Assembly: GCA_964252035.1 (NCBI GenBank)
Contig: OZ176213.1
Source of the DNA: Podarcis erhardii
Taxonomy: Eukaryota
DNA length: 64,000 nucleotides
Strand: one strand, 5' to 3'
Positions 3,901 through 56,899 of this stretch are shown here, piece after piece (position 1 is the stretch's first letter; every line of letters starts with the position of its first letter). The position numbers and the translations under genes were made by a program. The notes beneath the pieces are model-generated. The model saw nothing but the letters and a program-made list of their open reading frames with translations. It was not told the DNA's origin and did no database searches.

Positions 3901-6900
3901 GCTGCCAGATGGGTGTGTGGACCTCAGAAAGGGAAATCTCTGACCTTATCCCATGTGATCTTGGGACAGTCACTTGCCCGCTTGTTGTCTCTAGACCTCC
4001 ATCTCCTTTTCGTTGGTTTCCTAGGGCTTCTTGTGCTTTGCCAGTTGCTTCTCTGAGTTTGCCATATTGGTCCCCTACTTGATAATACACACTATATCAT
4101 ACGCATCCAGGCCATTTTGGAGCCACAAATCCTGCTCCGTATCTTGCACCTTTGAGTGTTGGACCTGTGAACCTTAAGGCACTGTGATCACAAATTACCT
4201 ATTTGGTGCTGGTTGTTGACGTGTGAGCATCTACTCTTGCGTTGTATTCTTTTTAAGACTTGCAGCAGAGTTTCTTTTACAGAGAATCTTTATTATTTAC
4301 AAAAAAATTACACCGGTCAAATAAAACAATATAATTCCTTCTCCTCTAGCCATCTGACCAGAGACTTAATTGCTGACTCATTTACAACTTTGTTCATTTA
4401 CACACTAACTGACCTTTATTGACCACATGCCCTTAATAAAGGCACCTGTTGCTGGGGAGATTTTTCTGTTGCCTAGCAACCTGTTCAAGACCAATTCTCA
4501 AGTTCTTTCTAGAATATTCCAGCAGCCCTCCTAACTTGAAATTCTGTCTTGAACACCTGGCAATTTTTTTCTGCTTTTACTCAGTAAGACCCAATTCCAT
4601 AGTCAGCATTTTAAATTTAAAGGCTTTGTAAAAATATATGCAATCATAAACCCTGTAGAACAATACCTAAGCTTGATCCATCCTTTTAAAATGCAATCTT
4701 TTACATGTGCATAGCATACATCTAAGAGTTTTGGTTTCGGTTTACATTTTTCTGTCTTTCCTGCAACTGGACTATACACTCCAGAGTTTCCTGCAAGACT
4801 CTTTCAAGATCAGACAGGCATTGTGTGGGGTGTTTTCACCATCAGCTTATTTCTCTGGGTTTTCTCTGGCTGCTAATACTGTTAAGGCAGGTTTTATTTT
4901 TAAATTGCTTCTTGAAAATTTAAAGGAGCTTTGGGGAGGTAGGGAACCTTGGAGTAGGTGAGCTTTTGTCAGGGTTTGCTTCTGCAGTTCAGCTCTGCTC
5001 TTTTGAGATGGGTGCTTGAAGTGCCTTCTCCAGCGAGAAGAACATCATTTTGCCTGTTCTGACCTTACAGGTAAGTATTTTATTTTGTTGAGCGGAGGAT
5101 AGTGGAATAAAATGCCTTGTGGCTAAAGGGTGCGGCACTTTCTCCCTCTTTCTCTGATAGAGCTGAGCATCAACAGGATGGATACCCAAAGAGTTTCCTG
5201 TTTAGAATGTCAGAAAGTAGCTCTGTTGTGGGAAGAGCACTGCTCTGGGAGCTTTGCCCTGCCCTACATGTATCTGGCTGAGAGGGACTTGCCTGTGGAT
5301 GGATCCCTCTTGGGATCTGAAAGCGCTGGTCCTAGGGCATCTCTCCCCTTGTACCTGGCACCTGGTGCCTTCCCTCCCTCCCTTGAATCCCAGTCTGCTT
5401 TTCTTTCAGGAGAGAGAGGACCCCATCATGGAGTGCCAGGAGAGTGAGGTGGACGTCTCCCCCTCTCGCACGGGAGGCTCTTCTTCGCTTGCCTCTGGAG
5501 ACCTTGGTGACATCAGCTCCTTCTCATCCAAGGCCTCTGGCCTCCAGCGCATGTCCAGTGGAGGGAGCAGTGCCTTGTCCGTCACACACAGTGGGACAAG
5601 TTCTGGGCAAGGAGGCACTCTTCTGAGAGGAGGGAGACCTTGCCAAGGAGCCGGGCCTGGAGACTTGGCCTTCCCAGGGGTCAGAAAGCTCAGGTGGGTG
5701 CAGGGCCTCTGGGAAAAGGACATCAGAGGAAGGCTTCACTTTGGGGGAACAGCAGGGTGGAAGAGAGAGAGGCCATTTTGCATTCTTTGGAGTTTTGTTT
5801 TAGGTGGGGCATGAATATGACTCTGTCAGTGTGTTGTTTAACCAGATTCCAAACTGAAAGCCTGTGCTATACTTTTAAAAGGCCATGGGTTCTAAAACGA
5901 ATTGAATTTATTCACAGTTGGCGAGTTAATATTTTTGATGTCAAGGTTTTAAATACTTGAAGGTTGGTGTTGTATTGAGTGATGTTTCAAACTGGGGGAA
6001 CAATGCGGCAAATCATGTTGGGTTGCCTTGTGAGCAGCTTTATTTGGGCTTTGCTGTTTACCTTGAAATGCGAGGAATAAATTCTTTGTGCCCACAGTTC
6101 TGTGCCATGACCCTGGGAGCATGTGTGGGGCCTCCAGGGCATTGTGGCTGGCAGGCAGGCTGGCTATGCAGAGGTTAACGCTGCCTTTGGTTTCCCTAGC
6201 CCTAGGAAGGGGGGCAGCCAGCCTCAGTCTCCAGTCCAGCCTGACCATGCAGCAGTTACTGGGGTGTGTGAGGAGGAAGCGCAAGGCATGATCAACCAGA
6301 GGAGTGGCAGAGCCCCTCCAACTCCTCGCAGACGAGGGCGAAGGGGCCGCCTCACATCGCGATCGGCTGGAGCCAGGTAGCGTGGTGAAGGTCAGCTGAT
6401 GCTGATGAGGGAGGTGACCCTCGTGGGGTGGAGTAGCAAGAGCTAAAGGCCCTTGCAGCTTCTCCAGCTGTTTCTCTCCCTGGATCTGCAGGGCCAGCCT
6501 GCCAGCTGTGGAGGATCTGTCAACCACAGCCTTGCCAGAAGAGGACTGCCACACGCATCGCCCTTTGAAGGGGCAGGACCGCAGCATCTCCCCTGAAATC
6601 CCCTTGCAAGAGCGTCTGGGGGTTTCTACCAGCACAGAGCTTTCCTCTGCCACCACCTCCTCTTCTGCAAACAGTTTTGTGGGCCTCCGGGTGGTGGCAA
6701 AGTGGTCCTCGAATGGCTACTTCTACTCTGGGACTATCACACAGGATGTAGGGGGTGTCAAATATAAGCTGCGCTTTGACGATGGCTATGAGTGTGATGT
6801 TCCAGGCAAAGACATCTTGCTGTGCGACCCTCTCCCCCTGGAAACAGAGGTGACGGCCCTTTCGGAGGACGAATACTTCAGCGCAGGTAACTCGTCTGGC

Positions 6901-9900
6901 TGGCGAGGGACCTGCAGTGTTTGGGGTGGGCGGTAGGGGGGAGTTGGGTCCCAGGCTGTGAGCTGCCCTTATGATGCCTTCTGCCTTGGCTGCAGGGGTA
7001 GTGAAGGGGCACCGGAAGGAGGCTGGGGAGCTGTTCTATTGCATTGAGAAGGAGGGCCAGCGGAAGTGGTACCGGCGGAGAGCAGTCATCTTGTCTTTAG
7101 AGCAAGGGAATCGGCTCCGAGAGCAATTTGGGTTGGGCCCCTACGAACCCGTCATGCCCCTGACAAAGGCGGCTGACATCAGCCTTGGTAAGCAGCCTGT
7201 AGGCAACTGCCCTGTGGGTCTGGCCGAGAGAAATGGGAACACCTAGGAACCTGTTAATTGAGGGCTGGAGCTGCAGGATGCTGGCCTTGGGTAAACTCTT
7301 CAGTTTTAAGAGGCGCAAGTGACTTCCTTCTGCTACCCTGCAGAAAACATGCAGAGGGGCCTTGGTGCTGCTGCGTGTTGAGGTGGGAGCTAACAACATT
7401 TTCCTTGTGGGGCTAGATAACCTGGTGGAAGGAAAGCGGAAAAGGCGCAACCTTGGCTCTCCCAGCACCTCCAACAACACAACACCCACCCGCAAGGGCC
7501 CTGAGAGCCCCCAGACCCCGCACAGGCTGTCTAGCAAGAGGAAGCTAGTTGCCTCAGAAGAGGAGAGATCCCCTGCCAAACGAGGGCGGCGGGCAACCCC
7601 TACAAAGCCAGGTCAGACTGTTTTATGTCTCCTTGTATTGCATCTCTTCTCCCTGGATCAGACTTTCCCTTCTTGGTCTCCTCCAGCCTTTCCTCCCAAA
7701 CCAGAGGAGCTGGAGCTGAGCTCTTGCACCAGGAGGATCAAGGCTCCCCTCCCTCTCCATGAGAGAAATTCTAAGTTGAGGCTGCTGACCTGCTGTCAGG
7801 AGGCAGCCACAGGACTTTGATTTTCCTCCCTCCCTCCACAGGGGCTGCCTGTTCCAGGGAAGCAGTGAGCCCATCTGTCAGTGGAGGGGACTTGGGAGAT
7901 ATCCCGGCACCAGATGACCGATGGGGGCCTATGCCCCACAACAAGACTCTCTTTCTGGGCTATGCCTTTCTCCTCACAATGGCAGACCCCACAGATAAAC
8001 TCTCCAGTTGCCAGGAGCCTGCAGTGAGCAGCGAAGAGGAAGGTGAGTGCTCCATTGCTCCAGGGAGGCTGTTGGGGGCAAGGGTGGCCCTCGTTGACTG
8101 AATCTGGTTAAGCCATTGCTCATTTAGGGTGGTGACAGAGAAGGCAGAACTAGGAAAGGGGGGCCCACCTAGTTCAGCATCTTGTTCACATGGGGGCTAA
8201 AGGAAGGCAGCTTGGCCAAGGATCCCTGGTAGGGATTCTGCTAGCTGTGGTTTCTGTCCTCTTTGCAGGATAGTGGTGTGCCTACAAGGGCTAAGGAAGT
8301 GGCAAGTTGTGGGGCTGCAAGAACTTGAATTCAACAAGCCAGTATCTTACTGCACTTTCCAAAGTTAGTTTATTGAGGGGATAGTTTAACCTGGGACTTG
8401 GTAAGACTGGCTGTATCCTTGCACCTTGCCAGCCAGTGTGCAAGCACATCACAGGAGGGCTGTTGGGCAATATGACAGTGTGAAATCTCTTGATGGCTAC
8501 TTGAGGAGCCGTGCCAGGTGGCAGTCATGCCTTCTGCTATTCCAGGTCCTAGAAGCCCCAAAGATAAGGAATTGCCAAGTGTGGGGCAGAACATGTTTGC
8601 CATCTTGTGGCCCTTTAAGAGAAATCAGTGATTTGGGAATGAGCTGCAGATCTCTCCTGCAACTTTCATGCTCTTTACAGCTACCATTTGGGGCTTGCTT
8701 TAGGGCTCAAAAAATAATTTCACTAACTTAACAGTCAATTTCTGAACATAGCTCCAAGTGTTGGTGCTTACCTTTTAAAACCCTTTGCAGCAAGGGGCTT
8801 GGATTTTTGAAGGACCACCACCTTCTGAACGAACCAGCCCAGGTACTGAGGTCATCACTGAAGGCTCTTCTCTGGGTTCCCCCTCCTTCTCTTAATTACA
8901 TGGGTGCTGTCTTGAAGGTTTTCTTGGCAATAGCACACCCCTTTGGGTCACTTTCCTCACCTGTTACTACTATCTCTTATGTCATCTTGGCACTAGGTGA
9001 AGACCTTTCTGCGTTTCTCTAGGCATCGCTAAATGTCTAAATAATCTGCTGTGCTGCACACACGTTCTTGTCAATTGTATTATTTTCTGTTGAGTATAAA
9101 AGCAGTTCTTAGAGCACATCACTGAACAGTGGAGAATAATTTTTAAAGTGAATAGCTGTTCCTAGTCAAGTTTAGTCTCTGAACTGAATTTCAATGCAGT
9201 TGTTTTAATGTTCTTTATTTAACAAAATTCATAGTTTACAAAGAAAGATCAAAATACTAACTTAAAAATTAACAGAAGCAAGCATTTAAAAAGAAGTCAA
9301 CATGCAGCTTTTAAAATAGAAATAAAATTTGAGATTTTGATTGTGTGGAAATGTTTCACAGTTCTCTTGCAAGGGAAGAGGTGTAGTGCTCTATTTATGC
9401 TAAAGAATTAACTCCGCTAACTTCATCCTGTTTTCTAGACTTCTTGGAGGTAACACCTTACAACAAACACTACATTGGACTGCAGCTGCAAGCTGGAGGT
9501 GGTTTCATCCTGGAGGACTTCAATGAAAGCCAGGTCAGGAGCCAGAGCTGGGGATACATGAAGTAGCATCACCTAGGTTGGCAGTGGAGATTTATTTAGA
9601 GAGGGTGTTGGTGCTTTGCTGCTGTTTTCCTTTTAATGATGAAATGGATGCTTTTCTGGGTGTGGTCCAAGGGAGGCAGGTGCGTGACGGGTGGCAGCTT
9701 CACCTGCACACAGGTTGTCAAATGGGAATTGCCAATTGTTCTCCTTTCAAGACCTGGGATGTGAAAAGGAGGTGCGTGGCCATGATGCTTCTTGGAATGG
9801 GACAGATCTTGATAGGAGCTGCTTGAAATAGAGGCAGAGAGAGCCTCTTTTCCTTCTATTGGCACATTTCTCAATTCTCTACTTCTGCCAGTACTCAGCC

Positions 9901-11007
9901 TTCCATTTTGCAGCTAGCCTGGCTGGCTAGTTGTCAAATAAGCATTTGACCACACCCGGTGTTTTATACTGAACCTGCAGCCTCTTCCAGGGCTTTGTGT
10001 TTGTATGGAAGCCCAGGTCTCAGCCTCCACTTCTTTTGTCCAGTGCAGTGCAGCCTACCAGTGCTTCCTGATAGCAGACAGACACTGCCGCAACCGGATT
10101 TACTTTCTGTGCCTTGCCCGAGGAATCCCCTGTGTGTCTCACGTCTGGGTCCATGACAGTTGTCATGCCAACCAGCTGCAGAACTACCGGAATTATCTGT
10201 TGCCAGCTGGTTATAGCCTGCAGGAGCAGAGGTTGCTGGACTGGTAAGTCCGTGAATGTTGGAGGGACCATGAGCAGCTTACCCACCTGGTGCAGGTGGA
10301 ACAGGGTGGCATGCTCAGTTCCTTTGCAGTGGAGCTGCCTCTAACTTTTGCTTCTTTCTAGGCACTCCCGTGAGAACCCTTTCAGTAAGCTGAAGGTGCT
10401 TCTGGTGTCCAGTGAGCAGCAGGACTTCCTGGAGCTCTGGTCTGAGATTCTTATGATGGGGGGCGCTGCTTCTGTTAAGCTGCAGGAATCTGCATCATGG
10501 AGCAAAGGTACAAGCCCTGGAAGCAGCCAGCTGGTTTCTGTGGCGGGTAGATTGGCAAGAGGCTCTCCGTTGCCCACTGAGACATACCAATCCCCCTGTG
10601 CAGAAAAGAAGCCTGCTTTAACTTCTCGATTCCTGAGGGTTGCTGAGAAGTTGGATGAGGCAGGGCAAGAATTGATTGGCTGCTTCTCCCTTCACCCCTT
10701 TCCTTGTGTGGAGCTGCCATCCATCCTTTTCCAAAGGCAGCAAGATCAAGTACCTGGTGCTGTGAACAAGTAGGAGGAAAGGTTTGACCACACAGGGCAA
10801 TTCTTGTTTTCTATTTCCACAGATGTGAGTCTGGCTGTGTTTGATGTCGTGGTGACTGATGCTTCGTGCCCAACAGCTTTCTTGAAATGTGCTGAAGCGC
10901 TACAGCTGCCAGTGGTTACCCAAGAGTGGGTGATCCAGTGCCTCATTGCGGGGAAGAAAGTTGGATTCAAACACCCAAAGTATCAGCTTGATTCTGTCCC
11001 CAGTTGA
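867..11007 (+). CDS. TP53BP1: TP53-binding protein 1, 3' part (14 exons in window; 5' exons lie upstream of the window)
   Basis: Phase-consistent exon chain encoding recognisable 53BP1 motifs: [14 protein letters not shown] oligomerisation domain, GAR, tandem Tudor ([13 protein letters not shown]), UDR ([20 protein letters not shown]), tandem BRCT; stop TGA 11005-11007. Confidence 0.97.
1407..1502 (+). CDS. TP53BP1: TP53BP1 in-window exon 2 (GC donor)
   Basis: ctatag/[31 protein letters not shown]/gcaagt; 96 nt, keeps frame only with the GC donor. Confidence 0.8.
1881..2370 (+). CDS. TP53BP1: TP53BP1 in-window exon 3 (LC8/DYNLL1-type motifs)
   Basis: [25 protein letters not shown]; tttcag/ and /gtgaga. 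Confidence 0.9.
2717..2830. mobile_element. Tc1/mariner (Tigger-like) MITE
   Basis: TA-flanked; TIRs CAGTCAAACCTC / GAGGTTTGGCTG (11 of 12 match). Confidence 0.75.
3430..3582 (+). CDS. TP53BP1: TP53BP1 exon: oligomerisation domain
   Basis: [44 protein letters not shown]; AG/GT, 153 nt. Confidence 0.95.
5410..5693 (+). CDS. TP53BP1: TP53BP1 exon
   Basis: [37 protein letters not shown]; AG/GT. Confidence 0.93.
6200..6376 (+). CDS. TP53BP1: TP53BP1 exon: GAR motif
   Basis: [17 protein letters not shown]; AG/GT, phase 2 to 2. Confidence 0.93.
6492..6886 (+). CDS. TP53BP1: TP53BP1 exon: first Tudor domain
   Basis: [39 protein letters not shown]. Confidence 0.97.
6996..7187 (+). CDS. TP53BP1: TP53BP1 exon: second Tudor and start of UDR
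   Basis: [44 protein letters not shown]. Confidence 0.97.
7417..7611 (+). CDS. TP53BP1: TP53BP1 exon: end of UDR and basic NLS region
   Basis: [23 protein letters not shown]; AG/GT. Confidence 0.95.
7842..8042 (+). CDS. TP53BP1: TP53BP1 exon: start of BRCT1
   Basis: [15 protein letters not shown]; AG/GT. Confidence 0.95.
9439..9533 (+). CDS. TP53BP1: TP53BP1 exon (BRCT1), not in ORF track
   Basis: [32 protein letters not shown]; ttctag/ and /gtcagg, 95 nt. Confidence 0.93.
10044..10243 (+). CDS. TP53BP1: TP53BP1 exon (BRCT1 and linker)
   Basis: [44 protein letters not shown]; AG/GT. Confidence 0.97.
10362..10507 (+). CDS. TP53BP1: TP53BP1 exon (BRCT2)
   Basis: [32 protein letters not shown]. 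Confidence 0.96.
10823..11007 (+). CDS. TP53BP1: TP53BP1 last coding exon
   Basis: [26 protein letters not shown]; TGA stop. Confidence 0.96.
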
Positions 11008-11117
11008 ACCTTTTTGCTTTGTGGAGGCTGTCATTGTCACCCAGGTTTTAAATGTCTGTGTCACTTGAACTGTGCATGAAGTGCTGTATATAGTTTTAAC
11101 TTCTGGACTTTTATGAT

Positions 11118-11123
11118 AATAAA
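11118..11123 (+). terminator. TP53BP1 polyadenylation signal
   Basis: AATAAA ~110 nt after the stop, followed by T/GT-rich sequence. Confidence 0.7.
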
Positions 11124-11671
11124 CGTCAATTTTCTTGTTGCAGTATACCTAGGATTTCTCCTCTTACCAACTCTAAAGTGGCCCAGCATGATTGCTTGCA
11201 GCTGCCAGTGGAGGGAAGAAGCGAAAGTTGCTCATTTAATACGCTGACATCAATTGCTGTAGATGGCCTGTCCTTTTTATCCCTCGGTCCATGAGCGGTC
11301 TCATTCAAGGGTTCCCTAGAGTTCCTTACTTACTTATACCAGCCTACACTCTGTGTAGATGCAGACTAGGATCTGCCAACAAACGTGGAGGTGTTTACAC
11401 ATTGTTGGTGTAGTTGCTCATGGGTGGGAGGGGCAATCTTCTTGTGGAGACTCTTGTCCCTCAGATAAGAAAAAAATATATACACAGTGGATTGGGCACT
11501 AGCTAGAGTTCTTCCATGGTACGCTTTTGCTGCTGAACTTGGAAGAGTAGAAAGAAACGTGTGGGCTGGAGAAAAAAAGCAAAAATAAGACTGATGGCAG
11601 AAGAAAATGAAACAAATAGGGGTGGAGGAGGGCAGGTTACCTGAAAGGCACCAGCAGTCTTGCACCACTTG

Positions 11672-15880: not shown

Positions 15881-15926
<46 letters not shown>

Positions 15927-41435: not shown

Positions 41436-41487
<52 letters not shown>

Positions 41488-41842
41488 TATTACTATTATT
41501 ACTATTATTATTAATTAGCCACCTTCTCAACAGGTGTTCTTGGCATCCTGCACCAGGGACTGGTGGCTGAAATGGGGAGGGGTTTTCTGGGTGGGGCTGG
41601 GGCTGCCCAGAGCGCCTCTTTGTCCCAGCTGAGGTGCATGAAAATGGGGGATGTTTCCTCAGAGTGCCAAATTGTGGGCCCTTTTTCCCTGCAGTGTTAA
41701 GAACAGAAAACATCTTGCCTGGGCGCTCGTCTTTCCCAGAGCCCAGCTGCGTTGCTTGGCCTAACTCTGCCAGTACATTCAATGCCACAGCAGGCCTGGG
41801 TGTGGCCTGGGATGATGTCATGCTTTAAATTTGGTAGCAGTG

Positions 41843-43787: not shown

Positions 43788-43834
<47 letters not shown>

Positions 43835-56852: not shown

Positions 56853-56899
<47 letters not shown>

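What the first reader, a model, noticed from the sequence alone, without database searches (positions are those of the whole stretch)
10086..10109. 53BP1 BRCT phosphate-binding lysine (K1814) is Ile; pocket Thr (T1812) is Asn
Seen: [10 protein letters not shown] (AAC 10092-10094, ATT 10098-10100) versus recalled human CRTRKYFLCL. Established: this motif aligns with BRCA1 R1699-T1700-x-K1702, whose lysine coordinates the phosphoserine; K-to-M mutation here is used to abolish 53BP1 BRCT binding to gamma-H2AX. Equivalents of T1737, K1773 and R1811 and the p53-face residues N1845 and D1861 are retained. ATT differs from a Lys codon at two bases, so a single-base error is unlikely. Inference: a natural separation-of-function 53BP1 that binds p53 but not phosphopeptides.
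Basis: partly seen in the sequence, partly recalled or inferred. Interest (0 to 1): 0.78.

Follow-up and report, generated by a model that had tools for sequence, protein, structure and literature searches.

The report
Lizard 53BP1 lost phosphate-binding lysine
Wall lizards and their close relatives carry an otherwise intact, expressed DNA-repair protein 53BP1 whose phosphate-gripping lysine was replaced (methionine in Lacerta and Zootoca, isoleucine in Podarcis), which is a natural version of the mutation laboratories use to switch off that one function.

Summary
Exon 10044-10243 (+) of a Podarcis TP53BP1 orthologue reads CRNRIY where human 53BP1 (PDB 1GZH, 1KZY, 5ECG) reads CRTRKY. So T1812 is Asn (AAC) and K1814 is Ile (ATT).

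It is not an error:
- Three other Podarcis assemblies (muralis, raffonei, lilfordi) have the same residues.
- A contig from another organism's run matches the exon apart from one base at 10197.
- Contigs in two runs guessed to be RNA are spliced exactly at the predicted junctions.

It is not general either. Twenty-three of 30 named squamates, plus turtles, crocodilians and nearly all birds, keep Lys.

The change is older than Podarcis. Lacerta and Zootoca read CRNRMY (ATG), a natural K1814M. The amphisbaenian Rhineura, sister to lacertids, reads CRTRLY (CTG). One loss in their common ancestor is the most parsimonious history.

Independent losses occur in tinamous, the boa Candoia, a gymnotiform fish, a mudskipper and cyclostomes.

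T1737, M1738, K1773, R1811, N1845 and D1861 are kept, and the domain is under purifying selection (dN/dS 0.03-0.3).

Published human K1814M/E data predict loss of gamma-H2AX phosphopeptide binding with p53 and USP28 binding intact. That remains an inference, because no biochemistry exists for the lizard protein. This is a new variant of a known kind, of moderate interest.

The parts
6685..6894 (+). Part of the tandem Tudor domain exon of TP53BP1
   Evidence: Pfam 53-BP1_Tudor, E 8e-39. The peptide is matched by the P. raffonei 53BP1 protein.
7154..7156 (+). Codon for Met at the position of human T1609 (UDR mitotic phosphosite). This belongs to a sister note, not to the pocket.
   Evidence: Lacertids read EPVMPLTK or EPFMPLTK, whereas Rhineura, gecko, alligator and chicken read ..TPLTK.
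7842..8042 (+). BRCT1 first exon. It carries the T1737-M1738 equivalents (LLTM).
   Evidence: PDB alignment to 1KZY_C positions 7-37. The acceptor AG lies at 7840-41 and the donor GT after 8042. The reading frame is continuous with the annotated P. raffonei protein.
9439..9533 (+). BRCT1 second exon. It carries the K1773 equivalent (PYNKHY).
   Evidence: PDB alignment to 1GZH_B positions 42-72. Borders are AG/GT. The spliced joint 9533/10044 is seen in runs X19 and X22.
10044..10243 (+). BRCT1 third exon, with the finding: R1811 kept, T1812 to N, K1814 to I. N1845 and D1861 are kept.
   Evidence: The spliced joint 10243/10362 is seen in X19 and X22.
10092..10094 (+). AAC, Asn in place of T1812
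   Evidence: The codon is ACC or ACT in Tiliqua, Candoia, Rhineura and Phrynosoma, and AAC in all lacertids.
10098..10100 (+). ATT, Ile in place of K1814
   Evidence: The codon is ATT in P. muralis, ATG in Lacerta and Zootoca, CTG in Rhineura, CAG in Candoia, and AAA in Tiliqua and Phrynosoma.
10362..10507 (+). Linker and BRCT2 exon. L1887 is kept; N1883 is Asp.
   Evidence: Pfam BRCT_3. PDB alignment. Joint 10507/10823 in X19 and X22.
10823..11007 (+). Last BRCT2 exon, including the stop codon
   Evidence: Pfam BRCT_3, E 6e-20. The translation ends at a stop.

Best explanation
The window carries the 3' end of the single, intact, transcribed TP53BP1 gene of a Podarcis wall lizard. In its tandem BRCT domain the lysine that coordinates the phosphate of a bound phosphoserine (human K1814, equivalent to BRCA1 K1702) has been replaced by a hydrophobic residue. 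The neighbouring pocket threonine (T1812) has been replaced by Asn.

History (shown by comparison): Lys was lost before the lacertids diverged. Lacerta and Zootoca have Met (ATG), and Podarcis then changed Met to Ile (ATT). The loss most parsimoniously dates to the common ancestor of Lacertidae and the amphisbaenian Rhineura, which has Leu (CTG). T1812N arose later, on the lacertid stem.

Mechanism (inferred from human mutants): without the Lys, the BRCT pocket no longer binds the pS139 tail of gamma-H2AX, nor other phospho-ligands that use the same pocket, or binds them much more weakly. R1811 (USP28 and carboxylate contact), N1845 and D1861 (p53 face), the Tudor domain and the UDR all remain. 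Recruitment to breaks through H4K20me2 and H2AK15ub, and the p53/USP28 axis, should therefore persist.

The recurrence of such losses in other vertebrates suggests that this ancillary phospho-reading function is dispensable in some lineages.
For: - Sequence and PDB alignment.
- Intact spliced reading frame with canonical splice sites.
- The same residues in three further Podarcis species; Met in Lacerta and Zootoca.
- Codons ATT, ATG, CTG, CAG and AAA.
- The ML gene tree places Rhineura with Lacertidae (SH-aLRT 100) and needs only 3 changes of the 'Lys lost' state among 26 sauropsids.
- Lys is kept in 23 of 30 named squamates, in turtles, crocodilians and almost all birds, and in most of about 150 cluster representatives reaching invertebrates and fungi.
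- dN/dS over the 253-codon BRCT region is 0.03-0.31 within lacertids and 0.13-0.19 against outgroups.
- Spliced contigs with exactly the predicted joints occur in two runs guessed to be RNA.
- No second copy of the exon lies in the window, and all 18 Podarcis proteins retrieved (isoforms from three species) read RNRI.
- Literature: the phosphate is bound by T1737, the M1738 backbone, K1773 and K1814, and K1814E abolishes peptide binding and recruitment of the isolated BRCT2 (PMC4688034). K1814M blocks gamma-H2AX binding yet leaves USP28 binding unaffected, enhances p53 binding, and rescues Nutlin-3 sensitivity and IR resistance like wild type (PMC5065530).
Against: - No binding data exist for any lizard 53BP1.
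- Three of the four phosphate ligands (T1737, M1738 backbone, K1773) and R1811 survive, and a new Arg appears at 1808 on the lacertid stem, so partial or retuned binding is possible.
- The human data are for Met and Glu, not Ile plus Asn.
- The shared-ancestor dating rests on one amphisbaenian and no teiid, gymnophthalmid, gallotiine or eremiadine.
- With AAA as the likely ancestral Lys codon (Tiliqua, Phrynosoma), every path needs an unseen silent or intermediate step.
- The AlphaFold model was too poor to inspect the pocket.
Confidence: 0.68

Rival explanations
1. The pocket is compensated or retuned. The lacertid BRCT still binds a phospho-ligand or another acidic ligand, using T1737, K1773, R1811 and the lineage-specific R1808 and N1812, perhaps with changed specificity. 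On this view the domain is not a phospho-binding null.
For: Three of four phosphate contacts and R1811 are kept. Four lacertid-derived changes (L1803F, Q1808R, T1812N, K1814M/I) lie within 12 residues of an otherwise very conserved stretch. The domain is under purifying selection.
Against: In human 53BP1 a single K1814 change abolishes binding even though all other contacts are present. The clustering of the four changes is not significant in a scan test (P about 0.24). Q1808R also occurs with Lys intact in Ahaetulla, and L1803F with Lys intact in geckos.
Confidence: 0.22
2. The change is an artefact, or a private variant: an assembly or sequencing error, or a rare allele in the sequenced animal.
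For: None was found. The only basis is the prior that a single genome can carry errors.
Against: The same AAC and ATT codons or residues occur in independent assemblies of three other Podarcis species. They also occur in the X22 contig from another organism. Sister genera carry the one-step neighbour ATG.
Confidence: 0.01
3. The BRCT domain, or the whole gene copy, is decaying. It would be a pseudogene, or a redundant paralogue, and the pocket change would be one symptom.
For: dN/dS is somewhat higher among lacertids (0.23-0.31) than in deeper comparisons (0.10-0.19). A second phospho-regulatory site (T1609) is also lost.
Against: The frame is open, with canonical splice sites and the normal stop. 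dN/dS is well below 1. Spliced transcripts exist. Identity to human across the 67-residue exon is high, at E 7e-39. The p53 and USP28 contact residues are kept. No second exon copy lies in the window.
Confidence: 0.03

Closest known systems
Human 53BP1 K1814M / K1814E engineered phospho-binding mutants
   Same: The position is the same, and in Lacerta and Zootoca the residue (Met) is the same too. The rest of the pocket (T1737, K1773, R1811) and the p53 face are untouched.
   Different: The lizard change is natural and fixed in a whole family, not engineered. Podarcis has gone one step further to Ile and adds T1812N. The functional consequence was not measured in the lizard.
Canonical phosphopeptide-binding tandem BRCT domains (BRCA1 S1655/G1656/K1702, MDC1, S. 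pombe Crb2)
   Same: The tandem BRCT architecture is the same, with Ser/Thr in the first loop and Arg at the +3/carboxylate site. Crb2 (Rhp9, PDB 2VXB) and MDC1 chains are the next PDB sequence matches.
   Different: The defining helix-alpha2 Lys is missing. The BRCA1 residue numbers come from my own knowledge, not from a tool.
Other natural 53BP1 orthologues without the Lys
   Same: Tinamous read RTRT or QTRT, Candoia aspera RTRQ, Brachyhypopomus gauderio RTRT, Periophthalmus CCNRP, lampreys (R/H)SRE and hagfish HGRS at the same motif.
   Different: These are independent events with polar or charged replacements. None shows the hydrophobic Met, Ile or Leu series together with T1812N seen in the lacertid and amphisbaenian clade.

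Membership tests
TP53BP1 orthologue | 53BP1-type tandem Tudor domain | tested here: met
   Pfam 53-BP1_Tudor, E 8e-39, on window 6685-6894.
TP53BP1 orthologue | C-terminal tandem BRCT domain homologous to human 53BP1 BRCT2 | tested here: met
   All four exon pieces tested align to 1GZH, 1KZY and 5ECG. Pfam BRCT_3 matches.
TP53BP1 orthologue | Best relatives are annotated TP53BP1 proteins, and the gene tree follows the species tree | tested here: met
   252 of 253 residues are identical to P. raffonei and to P. lilfordi TP53-binding protein 1. The ML tree recovers geckos, scincoids, lacertids with Rhineura, and Toxicofera.
TP53BP1 orthologue | Conserved synteny (TUBGCP4 next to the 3' end) | not tested
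   Only an earlier first-reader note (s1-217767) places GCP4 at about 23.4 kb. I did not check it.
Phosphopeptide-binding tandem BRCT (pSer pocket class) | Ser/Thr side chain plus the next backbone NH in the beta1-alpha1 loop (T1737, M1738) | tested here: met
   LLTM is retained.
Phosphopeptide-binding tandem BRCT (pSer pocket class) | Lys at the start of helix alpha2 that contacts the phosphate (K1814, BRCA1 K1702) | tested here: not met
   Ile (ATT 10098-10100) in the window and in three Podarcis species; Met in Lacerta and Zootoca.
Phosphopeptide-binding tandem BRCT (pSer pocket class) | Thr next to the Arg (T1812, BRCA1 T1700) that supports the pocket | tested here: not met
   Asn (AAC 10092-94) in all lacertids. 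The role of this Thr is from my own knowledge of BRCA1.
Phosphopeptide-binding tandem BRCT (pSer pocket class) | Arg that reads the +3 residue or the C-terminal carboxylate (R1811), and the second Lys (K1773) | tested here: met
   Both are retained. Their roles are given in PMC4688034.
Phosphopeptide-binding tandem BRCT (pSer pocket class) | Measured phospho-dependent peptide binding | not testable with these tools
   This needs FP or ITC with recombinant protein.

The most novel reading that the evidence does not exclude
Lacertid 53BP1 is not merely a passive loss-of-function at one pocket. On this reading it is a rewired reader. The remodelled pocket segment (F1803, R1808, N1812, M/I1814), together with the lacertid-specific loss of the mitotic phosphosite T1609, would reflect a coordinated change in how 53BP1 is coupled to phospho-signalling. 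That could mean a new non-phospho ligand for the BRCT pocket, or 53BP1 chromatin binding that is no longer switched off in mitosis.
Probability: 0.1. Interest if true: 0.75.

Novelty: new variant of a known kind. Interest (0 to 1): 0.5.

Why it matters
The role of gamma-H2AX reading by the 53BP1 BRCT pocket is debated. In human cells K1814 mutants still form foci, and K1814M restores IR resistance and p53 control like wild type. K1814E, however, fails to restore focal pATM, the step that paper ties to heterochromatin repair. R1811A/K1814M mutants lack a recently proposed PI(3)P-driven early assembly.

A whole lizard family that has lived with K1814M or K1814I is a natural knock-in, and on the single-event reading it has done so since before its split from amphisbaenians. 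It shows that the phosphate pocket can be dispensed with in a vertebrate while the rest of the domain stays under selection. It also offers ready-made proteins (Met, Ile, Leu, Gln and Thr variants) and organisms for testing what the pocket is for.

The intact Lys in most vertebrates and beyond shows that the loss is exceptional rather than the rule.

Tried and rejected
- The word search with the 67-aa exon alone gave only 3 fragment hits because of the length filter. I therefore used the representatives search to obtain full-length ids, and then two region and full-length word searches.
- No teiid, gymnophthalmid, gallotiine, eremiadine or second amphisbaenian appeared among the 120 rows shown per search. 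The searches are now exhausted, so the age of the loss cannot be bracketed more tightly.
- The look-up of encoding contigs holds only the longest isoform. The look-ups for P0007, P0159, P0157, P0161 and P0166 failed, so there are no codons for Hemicordylus, Elgaria, Eublepharis or Sceloporus.
- The AlphaFold2 model built on a 27-sequence alignment was poor (mean pLDDT 55.6, BRCT1 below 50). I did not use it for any fold search or pocket inspection.
- The clustering of lacertid-derived changes near the pocket is not significant (scan test P about 0.24), so I do not claim it.
- Rfam found nothing in the window.
- The paper searches found no work linking 53BP1 to lacertids.
- I considered and rejected an assembly error, a private allele, a pseudogene, and an alternative exon or paralogue.
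The window contains no N.

Full report
**What is there**

Window 10086-10115 on the + strand translates to [10 protein letters not shown]. It lies in a 200-base exon, 10044-10243, with an AG acceptor and a GT donor. phmmer of the exon against all PDB chains aligns it over its full length with the human 53BP1 tandem-BRCT chains 1GZH_B, 1KZY_C and 5ECG_C (E about 7e-39). Those chains read CRTRKYFLCL at that place.

Taking 1KZY chain position p as residue p+1713 puts the motif at C1810-R1811-T1812-R1813-K1814-Y1815. The same offset puts T1737-M1738 and K1773 where Baldock et al. describe them.

So T1812 is Asn (AAC 10092-94) and K1814 is Ile (ATT 10098-100). T1737, M1738, K1773, R1811, R1813, N1845, D1861 and L1887 are kept, and N1883 is Asp.

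**Gene context**

- Upstream on the same strand lie the 53BP1 Tudor domain (Pfam 53-BP1_Tudor, 8e-39), the UDR and the NLS exons.
- The five BRCT exons are 7842-8042, 9439-9533, 10044-10243, 10362-10507 and 10823-11007. They splice into an uninterrupted tandem BRCT that ends at the normal stop.
- The spliced BRCT region is identical at 252 of 253 residues to the annotated TP53-binding protein 1 of Podarcis raffonei and of P. lilfordi. Earlier notes of this scan call the genome a wall lizard, and this agrees.
- The window holds no second copy of the exon.

**Is it real**

- Every Podarcis 53BP1 protein retrieved reads RNRI: 18 proteins, being isoforms from three species.
- The P. muralis genomic locus has AAC and ATT.
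- In Logan contigs, run X1 is identical over 9000-11400 and is probably the source of the window.
- The X22 contig, from another organism, covers 10040-10244 with a single difference, at 10197.
- A DNA run of a third organism (X4) shows no listed difference between 10035 and 10196. This last point is weaker, because 71 differences were left off that table.
- Runs X19 and X22, which are guessed to be RNA, hold contigs joined at 9533/10044, 10243/10362 and 10507/10823 with GT..AG ends. These are exactly the predicted splice junctions. The same runs also hold intron contigs, and only contigs, not raw reads, were available.

**How general is it**

The representatives search returned 336 relatives. 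In the best 150 the position is Lys in the great majority, from vertebrates to distant homologues.

Among named sauropsids Lys is kept in:
- geckos (Eublepharis, Euleptes, Sphaerodactylus, Paroedura, Gekko x2, Heteronotia);
- skinks and a cordylid (Tiliqua, Lerista, Hemicordylus);
- anguimorphs (Elgaria, Varanus);
- iguanians (Phrynosoma, Sceloporus, Anolis, Phrynocephalus);
- seven snakes (Python, Liasis, Ahaetulla, Vipera, Crotalus, Pituophis, Thamnophis);
- turtles, crocodilians and nearly all of the many bird species listed.

**Dating the change**

| Taxon | Motif | Codon at 1814 |
|---|---|---|
| Podarcis (window, muralis) | CRNRIY | ATT |
| Lacerta agilis, Zootoca vivipara | CRNRMY | ATG |
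| Rhineura floridana (amphisbaenian) | CRTRLY | CTG |
| Candoia aspera | CRTRQY | CAG |
| Tiliqua, Phrynosoma | CRTRKY | AAA |

- ATG is one step from ATT. That explains how Podarcis reached a codon two steps from any Lys codon.
- A quick ML tree of 26 full-length proteins recovers the accepted squamate groups. It joins Rhineura to the lacertids with SH-aLRT 100.
- On that tree the 'Lys lost' state needs three changes: the lacertid-Rhineura clade, Candoia, and a tinamou.
- With ATG at the clade's base, the hydrophobic series costs about four base changes from AAA. Two separate origins cost about six. This count is my own inference.
- T1812N (ACC to AAC) is lacertid-only. Rhineura keeps Thr.
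- The dating rests on a single amphisbaenian. There are no teiids and no other lacertid subfamilies in the sample.

**Other natural losses, seen in passing**

- Tinamous: Eudromia and Nothoprocta read RTRT; two Crypturellus species read QTRT.
- The boa Candoia reads RTRQ.
- The gymnotiform Brachyhypopomus reads RTRT.
- The mudskipper Periophthalmus reads CCNRP.
- Lampreys have Glu and hagfish have Ser at the position.
- R1811 is itself replaced in several single lineages. It is Cys in Hemicordylus and gobies, and Gln in Colius, Sapayoa, Dryobates, Hippolais and the turtle Emydura.

The pocket is thus strongly but not absolutely conserved.

**Selection**

Nei-Gojobori dN/dS over the 253-codon BRCT region:
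- 0.03 between the window and P. muralis;
- 0.23-0.31 between lacertid genera;
- 0.13-0.19 between lacertids and Rhineura, Tiliqua or Candoia.

The domain is maintained, not decaying. The slightly higher ratio within lacertids rests on few substitutions.

Sixteen residues are derived on the lacertid stem. Four of them (L1803F, Q1808R, T1812N, K1814M/I) lie within 12 residues, but a scan test gives P about 0.24. I make no claim of clustering.

**Mechanism**

Shown in the literature for human 53BP1:
- The pS139 phosphate of gamma-H2AX is held by the T1737 side chain, the M1738 backbone, K1773 and K1814. R1811 holds the C-terminal carboxylate.
- K1814E or R1811E abolishes peptide binding. K1814E also prevents recruitment of the isolated BRCT2 and the restoration of pATM foci (PMC4688034).
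- K1814M blocks gamma-H2AX binding, yet p53 binding is enhanced and USP28 binding is unaffected. Nutlin-3 sensitivity and IR resistance are rescued like wild type. R1811A weakens USP28 binding (PMC5065530).
- K1814M lowers retention at breaks only mildly (PMC7666136).
- A 2026 preprint reports PI(3)P binding by the same pocket, lost in R1811A and K1814M mutants.

Inferred for the lizard:
- With Met or Ile at 1814 and Asn at 1812, the pocket should bind phospho-ligands poorly or not at all.
- The p53 and USP28 surfaces, and Tudor/UDR-based recruitment, should persist.

Not excluded: compensation by the retained contacts or by the new Arg at 1808.

An AlphaFold model built to look at this was too poor to use (mean pLDDT 55.6).

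**Verdict**

This is an old, family-wide natural K1814M/I variant of 53BP1, probably shared with amphisbaenians, and one of several independent losses in vertebrates.

I found no paper describing it in the held library. It is a new variant of a known kind and of moderate interest.

Noticed in passing
window 7154-7156 (+): The codon at the place of human T1609 (a UDR phosphosite) is Met in Podarcis, Lacerta and Zootoca (EPVMPLTK or EPFMPLTK). Rhineura, Eublepharis, Alligator and Gallus keep Thr. This is a second lacertid-specific loss of a phospho-regulatory residue in the same protein, and it matches the earlier first-reader note s1-217729.
   Followed up: partly
P0160 and P0346; loci L001:20398-20597 and L003:20955-21154: Lacerta agilis and Zootoca vivipara 53BP1 read CRNRMY (ATG). 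This is a natural occurrence of exactly the K1814M substitution that is used as the laboratory phospho-binding mutant.
   Followed up: yes
P0181, P0232, P0256, P0260 (tinamous); P0164 and L005:34596-34795 (Candoia aspera); P0042 (Brachyhypopomus gauderio); P0045 (Periophthalmus); P0064, P0066 (lampreys); P0071 (Myxine): The 1814-equivalent Lys was lost or is absent independently: Thr in four tinamous and a gymnotiform fish, Gln in a boa, Pro in a mudskipper, Glu in lampreys and Ser in hagfish.
   Followed up: partly
P0159 (Hemicordylus), P0047 (Neogobius), P0045 (Periophthalmus), P0255, P0262, P0280, P0322, P0323, P0256, P0260: R1811, the carboxylate and USP28 contact, is itself replaced in scattered lineages. 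It is Cys in a cordylid and in gobies. It is Gln in Colius, Sapayoa, Dryobates, Hippolais, Emydura and Crypturellus. The single-species cases could be variants or errors; I did not check them.
   Followed up: no
L004:20712 versus window 10362 (exon d acceptor): The P. muralis isoform X1 that I threaded uses an acceptor 3 bases downstream. This removes one Gln (SSEQQD becomes SSE-QD), which looks like a NAGNAG-type alternative acceptor.
   Followed up: no
alignment (BRCT region): Other pocket residues vary among squamates that keep K1814. K1773 is Gln in Elgaria and Anolis and Arg in Sceloporus. T1737 is Ser in the five snakes aligned.
   Followed up: no
window 15881-15926, 43789-43833, 41436-41513, 56856-56898: There are perfect or near-perfect trinucleotide arrays: (CAG)15, (GCT)15, (TAT)26 and (TAA)14. 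No Rfam family reached its threshold anywhere in the window.
   Followed up: no
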